Assembly: GCF_006345805.1 (NCBI RefSeq)
Contig: NW_021825917.1
Coordinates: 1 to 14,011, forward strand
Source of the DNA: Octopus sinensis
Lineage: Eukaryota
Direction of reading: 5' to 3'
DNA: 14,011 bases
Shown here: in pieces, positions 2,187 to 12,585 of the stretch
Position numbering within the stretch: position 1 is the first letter of the stretch
Layout: each line of letters starts with the position of its first letter
Notes under the pieces: model-generated
Databases searched by the model: none
What the model saw: the letters and a program-made list of their open reading frames with translations, nothing else
What the model was told of the DNA's origin: nothing
Program-made: the position numbers and the translations under genes

Positions 2187-2628
2187 CAAAGAAGGTGATT
2201 TGGTAAAACAAACAGGATAAATAAAACCACAATCCATGAATAAATACATTGTATTATCTTTAATCGGCAGAACTTCCAAGGTGGCTCAGAGGACCCATTA
2301 GAAGTACACCACACGCATTAAATGCCAAGAAGGTTCGCCAAGGACGGCGAAACTATAAAGTCATTCGCACCATCTATTATAAAGAATCTATTTTCTTGAC
2401 TCTGCCTTTCATATTGAGCACTCTATGTGTTAACGATTTATCAGAAATTCATATATACTAAAAACCGCAGCGAGAATCAAACTGTCTTTCCCTCATTGCT
2501 TGATGACTCCTTGAGATTATCACATTTTTGCCGTTAAGTGTTTGTATACTTTCTCTCGAAGCGAAATATAGTTTCAGTAAATGGAAGATGTTATTTAGAA
2601 TGGTATTTAGTATATTTTGTAGAAATTC

Positions 2629-2760
2629 GTGGCCAAGTCGTTGGGGCGTTGCATTCACGCTCGCTGGATCGTGGTTTCGATTCCCTGTCCGGTTGGTGCG
2701 TCGTGTTCTTGAGCAAAACACTTCATTTCATGCTGCTCCGGCCCAATCGGTTGTAAATAG
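2629..2760 (+). mobile_element. tRNA-derived SINE family C with CORE-like central domain
   Basis: A-box-like TGGCCAAGTCG (2630-2640), B-box-like GGTTTCGATTCC (2673-2684), then GTGTTCTTGAGCAAAACACTTCATTTCA...TGTAAAT, resembling the recalled CORE motif GTGACCTTGGGCAAGTCACTT...CTGTAAAAT. Second copy at 8990-9211 (-). Confidence 0.75.
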
Positions 2761-3168
2761 ACTGGCTTTCCACTGGATTGTCCTTCCGATGGACTGGCCT
2801 TCCAATGGACTTGCCTTCCGACGGACTGGCTTTCCGACGGACTGGCCTTCCAACGGACTGGCCTTCCGATGGACTTGCCTTCCGACGAACTGGCCTTCCG
2901 ATGGACTGGCCTTCCAATGGACTTGCCTTCCACTAGATTGGCCTTCCGACGGACTGACCTTCCGATGGACTGGCCTTCCGACGGACTGCCTTCCGACGGA
3001 CTGGCCTTCCGATGGACTGGCCTTCCGACGGACTGGCCTTCCGACGGACTGCCTTCCGACGGACTGGCCTTCCGATGGACTGGCCTTCCGACGGACTGCC
3101 TTCCGACGGACTGGCCTTCCGATGGACTGGCCTTCCGATAGACTGGCCTTCCGATAGACCGGCCTTCC
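2756..3168 (+). repeat. 16-bp minisatellite (GAYGGACTGGCCTTCC), 26 units, three of them 15 bp
   Basis: Units counted by hand from 2756 to 3168. Confidence 0.97.
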
Positions 3169-3171
3169 GAT

Positions 3172-3202
<31 letters not shown>

Positions 3203-3353
3203 CGATGATGATGGTGATGGTGGTGGCGGTGGTGATGGTGACAATGATGGTGATGACGAGGATGATGGTGAGGAGGATGAGGATGAGGATAATGATGATG
3301 GTGAGGGTGGTGGTGGTGGTGATGGTGACAATGATGATGACGACAATGATGAT
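3169..3353. repeat. Compound (GAT)n/(GGT)n/(GAG) trinucleotide microsatellite
   Basis: Direct inspection; begins seamlessly with the GAT of the last minisatellite unit. Confidence 0.95.
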
Positions 3354-3529
3354 GCTGAAAATACCAGCCAATCATAGTAGATTTATAACTGTTACACTTG
3401 CCCGTCATTCATTAGTCAGGTGTGGCAGTGATTAGCATGAAATATTAACCAAATTAAAGATATCTAAACAAAATGTGCAAGAGTTCGATTCCCAGCAGGG
3501 TCGTTGTTACTTCTTTTTTTTTTATTTTA

Positions 3530-3794
3530 GGTATGTGTCTGTGTGTCCTCCCCCCACATGTGTACGAGTATGAGAATGCGTGTGTTGCTGTTTGTGTGTG
3601 CATTTGCGTGTATGTGTGCGTGTGCGTGTGTCTGTGTGTCTGTGCGTGTCTCTGTGTGTATGCAGGTGGGTGGAAGTGTATGTATTCGTGTAAAAATGTG
3701 TCGCTTACACATTGCCCTCACACACATCTTCAACCATATATACGCACAGCAGCGCACACATACACACACTCCTATAACAGCATACCTACACCAG

Positions 3795-3841
<47 letters not shown>

Positions 3842-3870
3842 CACATACATAGAGAGCGCCACCTACACAC
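3530..3870. repeat. Degenerate (TG)n followed by (CA)n/(TA)n
   Basis: Direct inspection. Confidence 0.85.
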
Positions 3871-3959
3871 TCAGACACACGGACAGAAGCAGCAGGTTTA
3901 TGGATGTCGAAGCCTCCAGGGAGATATCTATTAACACCAATGAGCGGTGAGTGAAAATA

Positions 3960-4306
3960 AAATGTGTGTATATAGCGTGTGTATGTGTGTGTGTATTTGT
4001 GCGTGTGTATGTGTGTCTGCGTGTGTGTGTGTGTATGTTTGTGCGTGTGTCTTTGTGTGTCTGTGCGTGTGTGTGTGTGTGTTTGTGTGTCTGCGCGTGT
4101 GTGTGTGTGTGTGTGTGTCTGTGTGTGTGTGTCTATGTGTGTGTGTGTGTGTGTCTGTCTGCGTGTGTGTGTGTCTTTGTGTTTGTGTGTGTGTGTGTTT
4201 GTGTGTTTGTGTGTGTGTTTGTGTGCCTGCGTGTGTGTGTGTTGTGTGTTTGTGAGTGTGTGTTTGTATGTGTGTGTGTTTGTGCGTGTGTGTGTTTGTG
4301 CGTGTA

Positions 4307-4344
<38 letters not shown>

Positions 4345-4590
4345 GAGATAGAGAGAGAGAGAGAGAGAGAAAGAGGGAGATGGTAGAGAGAGAGAGAGAG
4401 TAGAAAGAGAGACAGACAGACAGACAGACGTAGATAGTCAGGCATATATATGCGGGAATGAGACGAAAGCAGAAAGGTAAGAGAGAGGCAAAGGTAACTT
4501 GTGGGAAAGAGACAGACAGACAAATAGAGAGAAAGAGAGAGGCGGGGGGAGAGATAGAAAGAGAGAGAGAGATAGAAAGAGAGAGAGAGT
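3960..4590. repeat. Long imperfect (TG)n, then (TA)n, (GA)n/(GACA)n polypurine tract
   Basis: Direct inspection. Confidence 0.95.
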
Positions 4591-4734
4591 GTTGCGTATA
4601 ATTTGGCACCGTTTGATAATTTATTGCTGGTAAAAACTAACAAATGTGGGATGTGACGGTGGGGTGGTGGGTGGTAGTTGAATGGATCGAGGGTATGTGG
4701 TGGGGGGATCAGTAAGGGTCAATAAGGGTCGTTA

Positions 4735-4931: not shown

Positions 4932-5349
4932 AAGGTGGCCAGATGGCAGAACTGGTAGCGCGCCGGGCGAAATGCTAAGCAGTATTTAGTCTGCCGTTAC
5001 GTTCTGAGTTCAAATTCCGCCGAGGTCGACTTTGCCCTTCATCCTTTCGGGGTCGATTAAATAAGTACCAGTTACGCGCTGGGATCGATATAATCGACTT
5101 AATCCGTTTGTCTGCCCTTGTTTGTTCCCTCTGTGTTTAGCCCCTTGTGGGTAGTAAAGAAATAGGTATTTCGTCTGCCGTTACGTTCTGAGTTCGAATT
5201 CCGTCGAGATCGACTTTGCCTTTCATCCTTTCGGTGTCGATTAAATAAGTACCAGTTACGCACTGGGGTCGATATAATCGACTTAATTCCTTTGTCTGTC
5301 CTTGTTCGTCCCCTCTGTGTTTAGCCCCTTGTGGGTAGTAAAGAAATAG
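4932..5349 (+). mobile_element. Young tRNA-derived SINE family A, dimer (one head plus two 184-bp body units)
   Basis: A-box TGGCAGAACTGG (4944-4955), B-box GAGTTCAAATTCC (5006-5018). Unit repeats from 4982 to 5166 (period 184). Tail GTAGTAAAGAAATAG. The central GCCTTTCATCCTTTCGGGGTCGATTAAATAAGTACCAG resembles the recalled Meta/MESC SINE domain (unverified). Confidence 0.9.
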
Positions 5350-5510
5350 ATATGGGCCGGTTTAAATGCTAAAGGGAGAAATCCGGTTTGCTTCGTTATA
5401 CACTAAATTCCCTCTGAGCGGAATGAAAAAACCACGTCGAGCCTGGTTCCAATTCAAAAACCGGAGAATGAAAACGAAACTGTGCTGAATATTTCATTGA
5501 AAGATCGGTG

Positions 5511-5691: not shown

Positions 5692-6115
5692 TTATTTCTT
5701 TACTGCCCACAAGGGGCTAAACATAGAGGGGACATATAAGGACAGACAAAGGAATTAAGTCGATTACATCGACCCCAGTGCGTAACTGGTACTTATTTAA
5801 TCGACTCCCGATTGGATGAAAAGCAAAGTCGACCACGGCGGAATTTGAACTCAGAACGTAGCGGCAGACGAAATACCTATTTCTTTACTACACACAAGGG
5901 GCAAAATGAAAACATAGAGGGGACAAACAAGGACAGACAAAGGAATTAAGTCGATTACATCGACCCCAGTGCATAACTGGTACCTATTTAATCGACCCCG
6001 AAAGGATGAAAGGCAAAGTCGACCTCGGTAGAATTTGAACTCAGAACGTAGCGGCAGACGAAATACCGCTAAGCATTTCGCCCGGTGTGCTAACGTTTCT
6101 GCCAGCTCGCTGCTT
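5692..6115 (-). mobile_element. Young SINE family A dimer
   Basis: Two body units (CTCAGAACG at 5850 and 6040; period 190 with an insertion of about 6 bp) and a head ending GCCAGCTCGC at 6101-6110. Confidence 0.9.
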
Positions 6116-7238: not shown

Positions 7239-7703
7239 TTTGTTTCTAACATTGATGCATGTGTAATGTTGGGAAAACAGGGCAAAATCGGTACGAATCT
7301 ACCCCAGAATGGGGAAAGGAAAAGTTGTCTCTTGTAAAATTCGAACTTACAACGTAAAAGAGAGAGACTTTACACTATAAACGATCGAGTTTGCCATTCA
7401 CGAATCTACTTAAATAACATTCACATCTGTGACAACAACAACAAAACTAACAAAACAATATGTTGAATTTAAATGCAAATTAGAACGATTAGCTCAACCA
7501 TAATGTGTATATGTCAATATATATTTCAACACACATACATGTGGGTGTATACATACATATTTGTGTATGTTTGTATGTAGGTGAGAGAGAAAGAGAGAGA
7601 GATTAAAAGAAAAATTATAAATAAGAAATAAAATAATACAATATCTTCTTTCAAAGTCGCATTCCATGACAGGGAAATAAACTGAAGGTTTGTGTATGGA
7701 ATC

Positions 7704-8348
7704 ATGTCAGTTCTTCTAAGAAATCCCACCCTAAATCATCGACTGGAAGTGATTGTTCAACCACAATACTTCGAAGAGGCTCTTTCATGTCTTGTGGAAT
7801 CAATCATATACGTAAGAAGCAAAGGCAAAATGGTACGGGATCCAAAACTTGTTTATCGCGAAGACACGATGAAAACGGCCATGAAATACTGCACATCGTT
7901 TAATCTGCAATATTCTTGTAATGAATCGAGTGAACTTCAGAGCAGAATTCTGGACCAAATCCAAAGAATTCGGTGGCTTTGCTGCGTAGAAGGACAAAAT
8001 GCAAACTGCAGTTTGAGCATGAAATTCTACAAGAATTTCATCAGTCCAACTAAATTTAGCAGTGCTCTGCAAATTTTTGAAATATGGCAGATACGCATTC
8101 GAATAGTGACTTGCGCAGAGGCGGGACATTCTCAAAACCAAGTACAGGAAATGGTAAATACTTTAAGGGACTGTATATCTTATATCCACGAATGCAAATT
8201 TTGTATTTCCCCTTTATCGAACATTGATACTTTTGAAGATTTGGTCAATATTCTTGACTTGGTATCCTTCACTGATGTTTCGTTGTATCATTTCTTCTTT
8301 GATCTTAACTTCCAAAATCCTGATGAAGATCAAAGCGTTTCGCAATAA
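7704..8348 (+). CDS. ATG101: Divergent ATG101-like HORMA-domain protein, 214 aa, uninterrupted ORF
   Basis: First in-frame ATG at 7704 (A at -3; in-frame TGA upstream at 7683-7685; the track's 7692 start is GTG). Gap-free hand alignment to recalled human ATG101 over 122 aa with 29 identities: LEVIVQPQYFEEAL/LEVSVEGRQVEEAM, RSKGK/RSTGK, YCTSFNLQY/DCDFIDFTY, SSEL/SEEL, SLSMKFYK/QMSLEFYQ, FEIWQIRIRIV/WEVWTVKVHVV, LRDCISYIHE/LCEKIINIVE, DVSLY/DVQPY. 645 nt open in AT-rich, non-repetitive DNA. Confidence 0.87.
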   Translation: MSVLLRNPTLNHRLEVIVQPQYFEEALSCLVESIIYVRSKGKMVRDPKLVYREDTMKTAMKYCTSFNLQYSCNESSELQSRILDQIQRIRWLCCVEGQNANCSLSMKFYKNFISPTKFSSALQIFEIWQIRIRIVTCAEAGHSQNQVQEMVNTLRDCISYIHECKFCISPLSNIDTFEDLVNILDLVSFTDVSLYHFFFDLNFQNPDEDQSVSQ

Positions 8349-8349
8349 A
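8344..8349 (+). terminator. Candidate polyadenylation signal AATAAA overlapping the TAA stop
   Basis: CAATAAAA contains the stop codon (8346-8348). GT/T-rich tract GTTTCGGTTTTTGGTTTT lies 15-35 nt downstream. Use unproven; a second AATAAA lies at 8441-8446. Confidence 0.4.
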
Positions 8350-8409
8350 ATGATTTCTTTGAAGTTTCGGTTTTTGGTTTTATTATTTTGACATGTGGAT
8401 TTTTCTATG

Positions 8410-8610
8410 CGGTGGATTTGTAGAATCGCTAGAGCGTCAGAATAAAACGGCCTTGTGGTTTGTTTTCCGATTCGTTACGTTCTGAGTTCAAATCCTGTAG
8501 AGATAACCTCTCATCCTTTTGAGATCGCCAAAATAAGTACCAGTAAATTTAGTGGGGTCGATGCAATAGGCTTGGCTCTTCCCTTAGAATTACTGGCATT
8601 GTAGTAAAAT
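8410..8610 (+). mobile_element. Decayed SINE family A copy just 3' of the ATG101-like ORF
   Basis: TGTAGAATCGCTAG head, GTTACGTTCTGAGTTCAAATCC B-box region, CATCCTTTT...AATAAGTACCAG...GGGGTCGATG body. Confidence 0.7.
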
Positions 8611-8989
8611 TAGAACTTTTTAATTAATTTATCTAACGGTTATATTTCAAAAAATGCTTTATTTGTTAAGCTTATAATTATTTTTATGCCATTTTTAATA
8701 TTCCAAAAGGAAAACGGCCACTTCCAGAATACGATAGAGTAACTTAATATATTTTGCTACTTTCGTTTCTTTCGCGTTCAAAACTATCCGAAGGTAATAT
8801 TTATTTTACCTCCCTCCTAGGATCGAAATAATAATGTTTTAAATCGATCGCACCCTTACACCTAAAATTGCTGTCTGTCTTCTAAATTTAGGAATATCCA
8901 CTTTTTCTTAAAAAGATTAAATATGACATTTTTGTTGTACAATATTGATTTCTAGTCTAGACTTAAGTATTATCGCAAGTTCTAAAACT

Positions 8990-9268: not shown

Positions 9269-9464
9269 TTTTCTACTCTAGGCACAAGGCCTGAAATTTT
9301 GGGGGAAGAGGCAGTCGATTAGATCGACCCCAGTGCGTAACTGGTACTTAATTTATCGACGCCGAAAGAATGAAAAGCAAAGTCGACCTCGGCGGAATTT
9401 GAACTCAGAACGTCAAGTCAGACGAAATACTACTAAGCATTTCACCCGGCGTGCTAACGTTTCT
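9269..9464 (-). mobile_element. SINE family A host copy (CAAGGCCTGAAATTTT tail) interrupted at its A box
   Basis: Well-preserved body ending at GTGCTAACGTTTCT. Confidence 0.85.
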
Positions 9465-9861
9465 TATTGCCCACAAGGGGTTAAACATAGAGGGGACAAA
9501 CAAGGACAGACAAAGGGATTAAGTCGATTGCATCGACACCAGTGCGTAACTGATACTTATTTAATCGACCCCGAAAGAATGAAAGGCAAAGTCGACCTCG
9601 GCGGAATTTGAACTCAGAACGTAGCGGCAGACGAAATACCTATTTCTTTACTACCCACAAGGGGCAAAACATAGAGGGGACAAACAAAGGAATTAAGTCG
9701 ATTACATCGACTCCAGTGCGTAACTGGTACTTATTTAATCGACCTCGAAAGAATGAAAGGCAAAGTCGACCTCGGCGGAATTTGAACTCAGAACGTAGCG
9801 GTAGACGAAATACCGCAAAATATTTCGCCCGGCGTGCTGGCAATCCTGCCAGCTCGCCGCC
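9465..9861 (-). mobile_element. Young SINE family A dimer
   Basis: Two body units (CTCAGAACG at 9613 and 9787; period 174 owing to a small deletion) and a head ending GCCAGCTCGCCGCC. Confidence 0.9.
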
Positions 9862-10780: not shown

Positions 10781-10973
10781 CTCAGAACGTAGCGGCAGAC
10801 GAAATACTTTTTTCTTTACTACCCACAAGGGGCAAAACATAGAGGGGACAAACAAGGACAGACAAAGGAATTAAGTCGATTATATCGACCCCAGTACGTA
10901 ACTGGTACTTAATTTATCGACCCCGAAAGGATGAAAGGCAAAGTCGACCTCGGCGTAATTTGATCTCAGAACG
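10781..10973 (-). mobile_element. Circularly permuted single SINE family A body unit (184 bp plus 9-bp terminal redundancy)
   Basis: CTCAGAACG at 10781-10789 and 10965-10973; dimer-type tail/body junction inside at about 10801-10820; no head. Confidence 0.85.
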
Positions 10974-12148: not shown

Positions 12149-12585
12149 GGCGAGCTGGCAGAATCGGTTGCACGCCCATTAAGATGCTTTGCGACATTTC
12201 ACCCGCTTTTTTTTTTTTTAATTCTGAGTTCAAATTCCGCCGAGGTCGACGTTACCTTTCATCCTTTTAGTTTCAGCAAAATAAATACCTATTTCTTTAT
12301 TACCCACAAGGGGCTAAACACAGAGGCAACAAACAAGGACAGACATAGGTATTAAGTCGATTACATCGACCCCAGTGCGTAACTGGTACTTTAATTTATC
12401 GACCCCGAAAGGATGAAAGGCAAAGTCGACCTCGGCGGAATTTGAACTCAGAACGTAACGGCAGACGTAATACCGCAAAGCATTTCGTCCGGCGTGCTAA
12501 CGTTTCTGCCAGCTCGCCGCCTTGCAGCAAAATAAATACCAGTTAAACCCTGGGGTCGGTGTAATCGACTTACCTTCTTCCACTA
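12149..12585 (+). mobile_element. Older SINE family A host copy split by an antisense insertion
   Basis: A-box TGGCAGAATCGG (12156-12167), B-box GAGTTCAAATTCC (12226-12238). The body resumes after 12540 with CAGTTAAACCCTGGGGTCGGTGTAATCGAC. Confidence 0.8.
12290..12524 (-). mobile_element. Full-length young SINE family A monomer (235 bp) with 16-bp TSD
   Basis: TSD CAGCAAAATAAATACC at 12274-12289 and 12525-12540; head AAGGCGGCGAGCTGGCAGAAACGTTAG; tail AATAAAGAAATA. Confidence 0.95.

What the first reader, a model, noticed from the sequence alone, without database searches (positions are those of the whole stretch)
8043..8060. WF finger lost: S-R-W-P-F-S replaced by S-P-T-K-F-S at exactly the same position
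Seen: codons 8049-8057 encode T116-K117-F118 and align without gaps to human W110-P111-F112 between the conserved FY and EIW motifs. Established: the exposed WF finger is needed for autophagy downstream of ULK1-complex assembly but not for ATG13 binding. Inference: this protein cannot perform the canonical WF-finger step, so it may be a decoy/dominant-negative or bind a different partner.
Basis: partly seen in the sequence, partly recalled or inferred. Interest (0 to 1): 0.75.

Follow-up and report, generated by a model that had tools for sequence, protein, structure and literature searches.

The report
Divergent octopus ATG101-like gene lacking membrane anchors
The missing tryptophan is real, but it sits in a fast-evolving, intronless, octopus-lineage copy of the autophagy gene ATG101 that has changed most of the family's conserved residues and also lost its second membrane-binding element, so it is best read as a re-purposed extra copy, not a damaged standard gene.

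Summary
ORF 7704-8348 (+) of this Octopus sinensis contig encodes a 214-aa ATG101-family HORMA protein. Codons 8043-8060 (S-P-T-K-F-S) align without gaps to human S108-R-W110-P-F112-S113. Trp110 is present in 119 of 120 canonical animal ATG101s.

The context changes the reading:
- **Divergence:** the ORF is only about 21% identical to canonical ATG101 and scores 39.5 Pfam bits against 110-153. It keeps 18 of 70 near-invariant positions.
- **Gene structure:** it is intronless, whereas the scallop gene is multi-exon and spans 5 kb.
- **Second loss:** it also lacks the C-terminal amphipathic helix, the other membrane-binding element.
- **Family:** related copies occur in a second octopus, Argonauta hians and two unnamed species. 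None has the Trp.
- **Selection:** the family is under purifying selection (dN/dS 0.14-0.55), and ORF retention is far beyond neutral expectation.

This looks like an old, probably retroposed, re-purposed ATG101-like paralogue. The "cannot do the WF-finger step" inference is reasonable. "Decoy/dominant-negative" is untested, and most conserved residues of helix αC, the probable ATG13-contact helix, are also replaced. I could not show that octopus also has a canonical ATG101, so a fast-evolving sole orthologue remains a minority rival.

The parts
7704..8348 (+). Intronless coding sequence of a 214-aa ATG101-like HORMA protein, including the TAA stop at 8346-8348.
   Evidence: Translation. Pfam PF07855 scores 39.5 bits against a cut-off of 26.5. 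Human ATG101 PDB chains match at E about 3e-6. The AF2 model has pLDDT 88 and Foldseek TM 0.84 to 5xv4/5c50. The ORF is conserved in L001, L004, L005 and L006.
8043..8060 (+). The flagged hexapeptide S114-P115-T116-K117-F118-S119. It is positionally equivalent to human S108-R109-W110-P111-F112-S113.
   Evidence: Gap-free alignments. Canonical W110 is present in 119/120 sequences and F112 in 118/120.
8040..8063 (+). Predicted beta4-beta5 loop (residues 113-120), the 'finger'.
   Evidence: DSSP on both AF2 models shows strands 101-112 and 121-134. Loop pLDDT is about 73 in one model and below 50 in the other.
8316..8345 (+). Short acidic C-terminal tail (N205-PDEDQSVSQ214, part of the 12-residue tail FQNPDEDQSVSQ) in place of the canonical 23-residue amphipathic C-terminal helix.
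   Evidence: The alignment to human ends at residue 195. Beyond that point the canonical tail is typically 23 aa with mean charge +1.6, whereas the four family tails are 6-12 aa with net charge 0 to -4. The role of the helix in membrane binding is described.
7854..7856 (+). Codon for Y51, equivalent to human Y45. The Y45D mutation abolishes ATG9A-tail binding. The residue is retained as Y/Y/F/F in the family.
   Evidence: Alignment. PMC9931213.
7696..7719 (+). Out-of-frame 7-codon upstream ORF that overlaps the main start codon. It is conserved in the second octopus.
8344..8433 (+). AATAAA (8344-8349) overlapping the stop codon, plus about 85 nt of comparatively well-conserved 3' flank. This is a possible 3' UTR.
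   Evidence: Identity to L001 is 85% (70/82) here against 74% further downstream.

Best explanation
ORF 7704-8348 is not the standard ATG101 gene. It is a member of a small, previously undescribed family of ATG101-like HORMA genes seen so far in octopods (Octopus sinensis, a second Octopus-lineage species, Argonauta hians) and in two unnamed species.

Shown here:
- The gene is intronless, very divergent and evolving quickly, yet kept open by purifying selection.
- Its predicted fold is the locked 'open-MAD2-like' ATG101 HORMA fold, with the family's short 5-residue beta5-alphaC loop.
- It lacks both elements that dock canonical ATG13:ATG101 onto membranes. These are the Trp of the WF finger (together with the neighbouring basic K/R residues) and the C-terminal amphipathic helix.

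Inferred:
- It arose by retroposition of an ATG101 mRNA in an ancestor of these cephalopods, and the canonical gene still exists elsewhere in the genome.
- Its product is a soluble HORMA subunit that cannot insert into the phagophore membrane.

Mechanism I commit to, at roughly one chance in three: it pairs with a closed-HORMA partner, most probably ATG13. The resulting complex is membrane-docking-deficient, so it attenuates or re-routes ULK-complex recruitment. This would parallel the way p31comet antagonises MAD2. Almost as likely is that the altered alphaC surface has been re-targeted to a different partner.
For: - **Source:** the contig is VCDQ01008190.1 of GCA_006345805.1, which is O. sinensis.
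- **Homology and fold:** Pfam ATG101 scores 39.5 bits. The AF2 model with the mixed alignment has pLDDT 88 and Foldseek TM 0.84 to human ATG101. The control model built from the four family members alone still finds ATG101 first, at TM 0.71-0.73.
- **Divergence:** identity to canonical sequences is 17-23%. Family members score 36-43 Pfam bits against 110-153 for canonical proteins. Only 18 of 70 positions that are at least 95% conserved in 120 canonical ATG101s are retained. At several of those positions the family has its own invariant residue: E13->Q, H26->E, P166->S, Q186->S, L189->H.
- **Finger:** the four database family members read T/T/S/D at W110 in the alignment, and the fifth copy (L006) also has no Trp in the loop.
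- **Tail:** the amphipathic helix is absent in the four aligned members, and the fifth copy also ends in a short tail.
- **Gene structure:** the ORF is uninterrupted in the genomic sequences available (window, L004, L006). Pecten maximus ATG101 spans 5035 bp in several exons.
- **Selection, O. sinensis vs the second octopus:** dN 0.137, dS 0.247, omega 0.55 (bootstrap 95% 0.34-0.92; Fisher p 0.016). dS is about equal to flank divergence of 0.21-0.27.
- **ORF retention:** about 10 indel events are expected in 642 nt from the flank rate, and 2 are observed, both in frame. P(no stop codon under 90 random substitutions) is 0.03.
- **Deeper comparisons:** omega is 0.14 for the X1/X2 pair and about 0.3 for Octopus vs Argonauta.
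[quoted passage not shown] The finger is not needed for ATG13 binding.
Against: - I could not retrieve a canonical ATG101 from any cephalopod. 'Paralogue' therefore rests on gene structure and rate, not on seeing both genes in one genome.
- There is no expression evidence. The Logan contigs are collinear with genomic flanks and end in repeats.
- No poly(A) remnant or target-site duplication supports retroposition.
- Omega of 0.55 in the Octopus pair is high.
- F118, F112 and I113 leave some hydrophobic character in the loop, so residual membrane affinity is not excluded.
- Six of the eight near-invariant alphaC residues are changed in the window protein, which weakens the assumption that ATG13 is still the partner.
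Confidence: 0.6

Rival explanations
1. Sole, fast-evolving orthologue. Octopods lost the ancestral multi-exon ATG101 and this intronless gene is their only ATG101. [quoted passage not shown]
For: No cephalopod canonical ATG101 was seen among the listed hits or named cluster members. The family is under purifying selection. The HORMA fold and Y51 (human Y45, the ATG9A-binding residue) are kept.
Against: Only 120 of 700 hits could be inspected, so the absence is uninformative. Canonical ATG101 is very well conserved in the other molluscs and lophotrochozoans listed: 67-82% best identity among them and 60-61% to the fish query. This family falls to 34% identity between Octopus and Argonauta. A sole essential subunit would not be expected to evolve at omega 0.3-0.55 or to replace 52 of 70 near-invariant positions. 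From general knowledge, ATG101 loss is known only where ATG13 carries a compensating cap, as in budding yeasts.
Confidence: 0.1
2. Processed pseudogene or decaying relic. The ORF is open by chance and the Trp loss is part of neutral decay.
For: The gene is intronless and lies in a repeat-rich 14-kb unplaced contig with no other gene. Omega is 0.55. One relative (L006) carries a 1-bp insertion. No expression data exist.
Against: Open reading frames of 207-216 codons are kept in at least four lineages at 34-40% identity. Omega is below 1 in every comparison and is 0.14 for X1/X2. There is a strong deficit of indels and stops relative to the flanks. Forty-two residues are invariant within the family, many of them specific to it. 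The L006 frame stays open for 107 codons after the extra base, which suggests an assembly error or a very recent event.
Confidence: 0.07
3. Neofunctionalised HORMA adaptor outside autophagy. The protein no longer binds ATG13 and uses its HORMA surface for a different partner, for example in a tissue-restricted role as with many retrogenes.
For: There is family-specific invariant chemistry at positions that are invariant for other residues in ATG101: the CLVE motif in alphaA, and Q146/E149/M150/Y160/I161 in alphaC. Conserved charged alphaC residues (E136, R137, R141, K151) are lost. Both membrane elements are lost.
Against: Nothing identifies another partner. Y51 (human Y45) and the overall ATG101-specific fold, including the short beta5-alphaC loop, are retained.
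Confidence: 0.23

Closest known systems
Canonical metazoan ATG101 (human ATG101; PDB 4WZG, 5C50, 5XV4, 8DO8; Pfam PF07855)
   Same: Same Pfam family and same predicted open-HORMA fold (TM 0.84). The length is similar. The FY and E-x-W motifs flank a finger loop of identical length. The beta5-alphaC loop is the same 5 residues. F112 and Y45 equivalents are kept.
   Different: Identity is about 21%. The Trp of the WF finger, R109, P111 and the K106/K107 basic residues are replaced. The C-terminal amphipathic helix is missing. Of 70 near-invariant positions, 52 are changed. The gene is intronless, evolves fast and is lineage-restricted.
Fission-yeast Atg101 (PDB 4YK8)
   Same: HORMA fold; Foldseek E 3e-6 to 8e-8.
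   Different: It is much more distant than the human protein (TM 0.52-0.57). The yeast protein conserves the Trp and Phe of the finger.
p31comet (MAD2L1BP), a HORMA protein that mimics one MAD2 conformer and antagonises MAD2 signalling
   Same: It is a functional analogy only: a divergent HORMA relative that pairs with the closed partner but cannot carry out the downstream step. This is recalled knowledge. PDB 2QYF appears only as a weak fold hit (rank 25).
   Different: It has no specific sequence or structural relationship to the octopus protein. Antagonism by the octopus protein is not shown.
Functional retrogene paralogues of stress-pathway genes (for example HAPSTR2, PMC9834230, listed)
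   Same: An intronless copy of a conserved multi-exon parent that is preserved by selection.
   Different: The parent gene has not been demonstrated in the octopus genome here. No poly(A) or target-site-duplication traces remain. The divergence is much greater.

Membership tests
ATG101 family (Pfam PF07855) | Significant match to the family profile, above the curated cut-off | tested here: met
   The score is 39.5 bits against a cut-off of 26.5, E 6.6e-10. It is far below canonical proteins at 110-153 bits.
ATG101 family (Pfam PF07855) | Open-MAD2-like HORMA fold with a short (about 5-residue) beta5-alphaC loop | tested here: met
   AF2 models give TM 0.84 with the mixed alignment and 0.71-0.73 with the family-only alignment, both to human ATG101. 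Strand 121-134 is followed by a 5-residue loop and helix 140-163. This is a prediction, not a solved structure.
Canonical (autophagy-competent) ATG101 | WF finger: exposed Trp and Phe in the beta4-beta5 loop | tested here: not met
   Trp is replaced by T116, and by T/S/D in the aligned relatives. Phe is kept as F118. W is present in 119/120 canonical sequences.
Canonical (autophagy-competent) ATG101 | C-terminal amphipathic helix (human G201-L218) that binds membrane | tested here: not met
   The protein ends in FQNPDEDQSVSQ. Family tails are 6-12 aa with net charge 0 to -4, against a typical 23 aa and mean +1.6 in canonical proteins.
Canonical (autophagy-competent) ATG101 | Heterodimer with the ATG13 HORMA domain, stabilising ATG13 | not testable with these tools
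   No cephalopod ATG13 sequence or complex prediction was available. Six of the eight near-invariant alphaC residues are changed in the window protein, so the result could go either way.
Canonical (autophagy-competent) ATG101 | Hydrophobic groove residue Y45 used for ATG9A tail binding | tested here: met
   Y51 aligns to Y45. The family reads Y/Y/F/F.
One-to-one orthologue of ATG101 | Conserved multi-exon gene and slow evolutionary rate | tested here: not met
   The ORF is uninterrupted in the genomic sequences available, whereas the Pecten gene spans 5 kb in several exons. Octopus and Argonauta share 34% identity; omega is 0.14-0.55.
Retrogene (retroposed functional copy) | Intronless copy of an intron-containing parent | tested here: met
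Retrogene (retroposed functional copy) | Parent gene present elsewhere in the same genome | not testable with these tools
   No tool searches the octopus genome. The protein searches were exhausted without listing a cephalopod canonical ATG101.
Retrogene (retroposed functional copy) | Poly(A) remnant and target-site duplications | tested here: not met
   By eye there is no A-tract after the 3' flank, and I did not search for flanking direct repeats. This is expected to be erased at this age, so it carries little weight.
Functional (selected) gene rather than pseudogene | dN/dS below 1 and ORF retention beyond neutral expectation | tested here: met
   Omega is 0.55 (p 0.016), 0.14 and about 0.3.
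Functional (selected) gene rather than pseudogene | Transcription and translation | not tested
   No RNA-seq data were accessible. There are only indirect hints: a conserved AATAAA, a conserved 3' flank and a conserved uORF.

The most novel reading that the evidence does not exclude
Octopods carry a natural separation-of-function ATG101. It is either an endogenous HORMA antagonist that binds ATG13 but cannot dock on membranes, making it a built-in brake on autophagy initiation, or it is the only ATG101 of these animals. [quoted passage not shown]
Probability: 0.15. Interest if true: 0.75.

Novelty: new variant of a known kind. Interest (0 to 1): 0.45.

Why it matters
[quoted passage not shown] A naturally occurring, selected HORMA relative that has dropped both while keeping the fold is a ready-made separation-of-function variant. 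It could show whether animals regulate autophagy initiation with HORMA decoys, as the spindle checkpoint does with p31comet. It is also one more lineage-specific gene family in cephalopods. No paper in the searched library mentions it, and its only named database entry is annotated 'hypothetical protein'. If it turns out to be the sole ATG101, the current membrane-recruitment model would not be universal among animals.

Tried and rejected
1. **Canonical cephalopod ATG101.** A profile search with canonical sequences returned 700 hits, of which only 120 are listed and none is a cephalopod. Cluster look-ups of 20 unnamed proteins, 17 of them canonical hits, gave tubeworms, mussels and oysters or no name. 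Contig look-ups for P0085, P0060, P0088 and P0090 gave unrelated samples. The question stays open.
2. **Naming the Logan/ENA samples.** Literature searches for SRR11869390, ERR12370320 and ERZ21867824 found nothing useful. L006 shares no octopod SINE with the window, while Argonauta does. This only hints that X1/X2 are more distant cephalopods.
3. **Phylogenetic placement.** Scoring canonical sequences with a profile of the four family members gave insects and fishes at the top with near-equal scores. The family is too divergent to place.
4. **ATG13-contact residues.** Qi et al. 2015 and Kim et al. 2018 are not held. Only ATG13-side hot spots were found. The statement about alphaC is therefore an inference from HORMA dimer geometry.
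5. **Literature on ATG101 in cephalopods or ATG101 retrogenes.** Nothing was found.
6. **Other genes or RNAs in the window.** There are no tRNAs, no Rfam hits and no Pfam hits in the other long ORFs, which lie in micro- and minisatellites.
7. **Rejected: sequencing error or chance alignment at the finger.** See the observation check.
8. **Rejected: pseudogene.** See the rival explanations.

Full report
**What is at the coordinates.**
The window is contig VCDQ01008190.1 of assembly GCA_006345805.1, which two papers identify as Octopus sinensis. An ATG at 7704 opens a 214-codon ORF ending at TAA 8346-8348. Codons 114-119 occupy 8043-8060 and read S-P-T-K-F-S. The ORF hits Pfam ATG101 (PF07855) at 39.5 bits against a cut-off of 26.5. 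It hits human ATG101 chains in the PDB at E about 3e-6. That alignment runs without a gap from the FY motif to the E-x-W motif, with 16 residues between them in both proteins. T116-K117-F118 therefore face W110-P111-F112.

**Is the Trp really invariant?**
I collected 120 canonical ATG101 sequences covering vertebrates, insects, molluscs, annelids, nemerteans, echinoderms, hemichordates and chelicerates. After alignment, W110 is Trp in 119 and F112 is Phe in 118. The one exception at W110, P0008 from a JGI metagenome, has a gap there. An Anopheles bellator 'ATG101-like' protein reads W-S-Y. Loss of the Trp is thus highly unusual for the family.

**The ORF is not an ordinary ATG101.**
- Identity to canonical sequences is 17-23%.
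- The Pfam score is 36-43 bits for this protein and its relatives, against 110-153 bits for canonical proteins.
- Of 70 alignment positions that are at least 95% conserved in the canonical set, the window protein keeps 18.
- Around the finger, R109, P111, E115, P118 and W119 are replaced in all four aligned family members. I117 survives only in Argonauta, and the basic K106/K107 become F112/I113.
- Canonical proteins end in a tail of typically 23 residues after human residue 195, with mean charge +1.6. This tail contains the amphipathic helix G201-L218. The octopus protein instead ends in FQNPDEDQSVSQ, net charge -3.

A recent preprint shows that the WF finger inserts into the membrane, with a smaller contribution from this C-terminal helix. 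The WF->DD mutation nearly abolishes GUV recruitment and ULK1 activity on membrane substrates (bioRxiv 10.1101/2025.11.07.687251). Earlier work showed the finger is dispensable for ATG13 binding but required to recruit LC3, WIPI1 and DFCP1 (PMC4824606). The octopus protein has therefore lost both known membrane-docking elements, not one.

**A small family.**
Exhaustive phmmer against 1.84 billion representatives found only three close relatives plus weak hits to canonical ATG101. A profile search added nothing further. The members are:
- the window protein;
- P0002, 76% identical, from Logan runs SRR11869390 and SRR11869394, on a contig collinear with window 7308-8984;
- P0003, 34% identical, 'hypothetical protein Ahia01_000462300' of Argonauta hians, on a 19.9-Mb scaffold;
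- P0004, 37-39% identical, with three variants more than 90% identical to it, from Logan run ERR12370320;
- P0005, from ENA assembly ERZ21867824.

P0005 differs from an intact gene by one extra G. The frame stays open for 107 codons after it, so the extra base is probably an assembly error or very recent. The ORF is uninterrupted in the genomic sequences available (window, Argonauta scaffold, ENA contig). None has a Trp in the finger: S-P-T-K-F, S-S-T-K-F, T-E-S-K-F, and a longer PPEST(T/A)DYVS(Y/F)I loop in the last two. All five have short C-terminal tails. The Argonauta locus shares the window's SINE family, whereas the 20-kb ENA locus does not. This hints that the last two come from more distant cephalopods, but I could not name them.

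**Fold.**
With a 58-sequence alignment, AlphaFold2 gives pLDDT 88 and pTM 0.86. Foldseek places human ATG101 first (TM 0.84, E 5e-16), then fission-yeast Atg101, then MAD2 and REV7. That alignment contained canonical sequences, so I repeated the prediction with only the four family members. Confidence falls to pLDDT 62, but the order of secondary-structure elements is the same and ATG101 is still the top hit at TM 0.71-0.73. In both models residues 113-120 form the loop between strands 101-112 and 121-134. Strand 121-134 is followed by a 5-residue loop and helix 140-163. This matches the short beta5-alphaC loop that is thought to lock Atg101 in the open conformation.

**Selection.**
O. sinensis was compared with the second octopus by the Nei-Gojobori method.
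- dN is 0.137, dS is 0.247 and omega is 0.55. The bootstrap 95% interval is 0.34-0.92 and Fisher p is 0.016.
- dS matches flank divergence of 0.21-0.27.
- The flanks carry 15 indel events in 959 aligned columns, of which 13% are multiples of three. That rate predicts about 10 events in the CDS. Two are seen, both in frame.
- Ninety random substitutions leave the ORF free of stops in only 3% of simulations.
- For the X1/X2 pair, dN is 0.18, dS is 1.29 and omega is 0.14.
- Octopus vs Argonauta gives omega of about 0.3, with dS near saturation.
- Forty-two residues are invariant across the four database members. Several replace a different residue that is invariant in canonical ATG101: H26->E, Q186->S, L189->H, P166->S.

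This is the pattern of a gene under its own constraints, not of a decaying copy.

**Origin.**
The scallop ATG101 gene spans 5035 bp with coding segments split at least near residues 65, 97 and 190. The octopod genes are single exons. Retroposition is the simplest explanation. No poly(A) or target-site-duplication trace remains, and I could not show the parent gene in an octopus genome. 'Paralogue' is therefore an inference from gene structure and evolutionary rate. I put the alternative, a sole fast-evolving orthologue, at about 10%.

**How it most likely works.**
Shown: the HORMA fold is kept, both membrane elements are missing, and purifying selection is acting. Inferred: the product is a soluble open-HORMA subunit.
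- If it still pairs with ATG13, the resulting dimer could not dock on PI3P/WIPI membranes. I give this roughly one chance in three.
- Against it, six of the eight near-invariant residues of helix alphaC are replaced in the window protein. By HORMA-dimer geometry alphaC should face ATG13's alphaC, where the ATG13 hot spots I131, R133, V134 and Y138 lie. A switch to another partner is therefore about as likely.
- Y51, the equivalent of human Y45 whose mutation abolishes ATG9A-tail binding, is retained as Tyr or Phe throughout the family.
- F118, F112 and I113 leave some hydrophobic character in the loop, so residual membrane affinity cannot be ruled out without an assay.

**Surroundings.**
The rest of the 14-kb contig holds micro- and minisatellites and SINE copies. 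There is no tRNA, no Rfam hit and no other Pfam-recognisable ORF. Three features near the gene are conserved between the two octopuses and fit a transcribed gene without proving it:
- a 7-codon out-of-frame uORF overlapping the start codon;
- an AATAAA overlapping the stop codon;
- about 85 nt of 3' flank at 85% identity, against 74% beyond it.

**Comparison with what is known, and novelty.**
The protein belongs to the ATG101 Pfam family and fold. It fails two features that define an autophagy-competent ATG101 (the WF Trp and the C-terminal helix), and it fails the gene-structure and rate expectations of an orthologue. Full-text searches found no paper on ATG101 in cephalopods or on WF-less ATG101 paralogues. 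I rate it a new variant of a known kind. Interest is moderate: it is a natural separation-of-function variant of a mechanistically topical protein, but it has no expression or binding data, and the parent gene has not been demonstrated.

Noticed in passing
window 7696-7719: An out-of-frame upstream ORF (ATG GAA TCA TGT CAG TTC TTC TAA) overlaps the main ATG at 7704. The second octopus (L001) has the equivalent ATG AAA TCA TGT CAG CTC CTT TAA. It could be a translational control element.
   Followed up: partly
window 8344-8433: AATAAA overlaps the stop codon and is conserved in L001. The first ~85 nt after the stop are 85% identical between the two octopuses, against 74% further downstream. This suggests a short conserved 3' UTR.
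   Followed up: partly
window ~8440-8600; also 4982-5353, 5707-5859, 9307-9413, 9695-9796, 10817-10963, 12416-12460; L004:15053-15226: There are multiple copies of a SINE-like repeat of about 180 bp that looks tRNA-derived. One copy lies directly 3' of the gene and has an orthologous copy in the second octopus. One tandem pair has a 184-bp period. A related copy lies in the Argonauta locus. None was found in the 20-kb ENA locus L006.
   Followed up: partly
window 2760-4430: A 16-mer minisatellite (GACTGGCCTTCCGATG, 26 copies) is followed by (ATG)n, (GT)n and (AG)n tracts. These explain the GC-skew peak and the long spurious ORFs listed at 2500-4650. None of those ORFs has a Pfam match.
   Followed up: yes
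L006:10323-10339: The ENA copy of the gene has a single extra G that shifts the frame. The downstream frame stays open for 107 codons. This is either an assembly error or a very recent inactivation. With the base ignored for analysis, dN/dS against L005 is 0.14.
   Followed up: partly
P0008 (JGI metagenome) and P0006 (Anopheles bellator 'ATG101-like'): These are two other unusual ATG101 relatives. P0008 scores 111 Pfam bits but lacks the finger Trp (…KKRT-PFS…) and has an insertion after it. P0006 is only 38% identical to the fish query and reads W-S-Y. Divergent ATG101 copies may exist in other lineages too.
   Followed up: no
L001:340-402: The gene caller extended the second octopus's protein by 21 residues from an upstream in-frame ATG. 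That extension is not open in O. sinensis, where the in-frame ORF begins only at 7692. The conserved start is therefore the ATG equivalent to 7704.
   Followed up: yes
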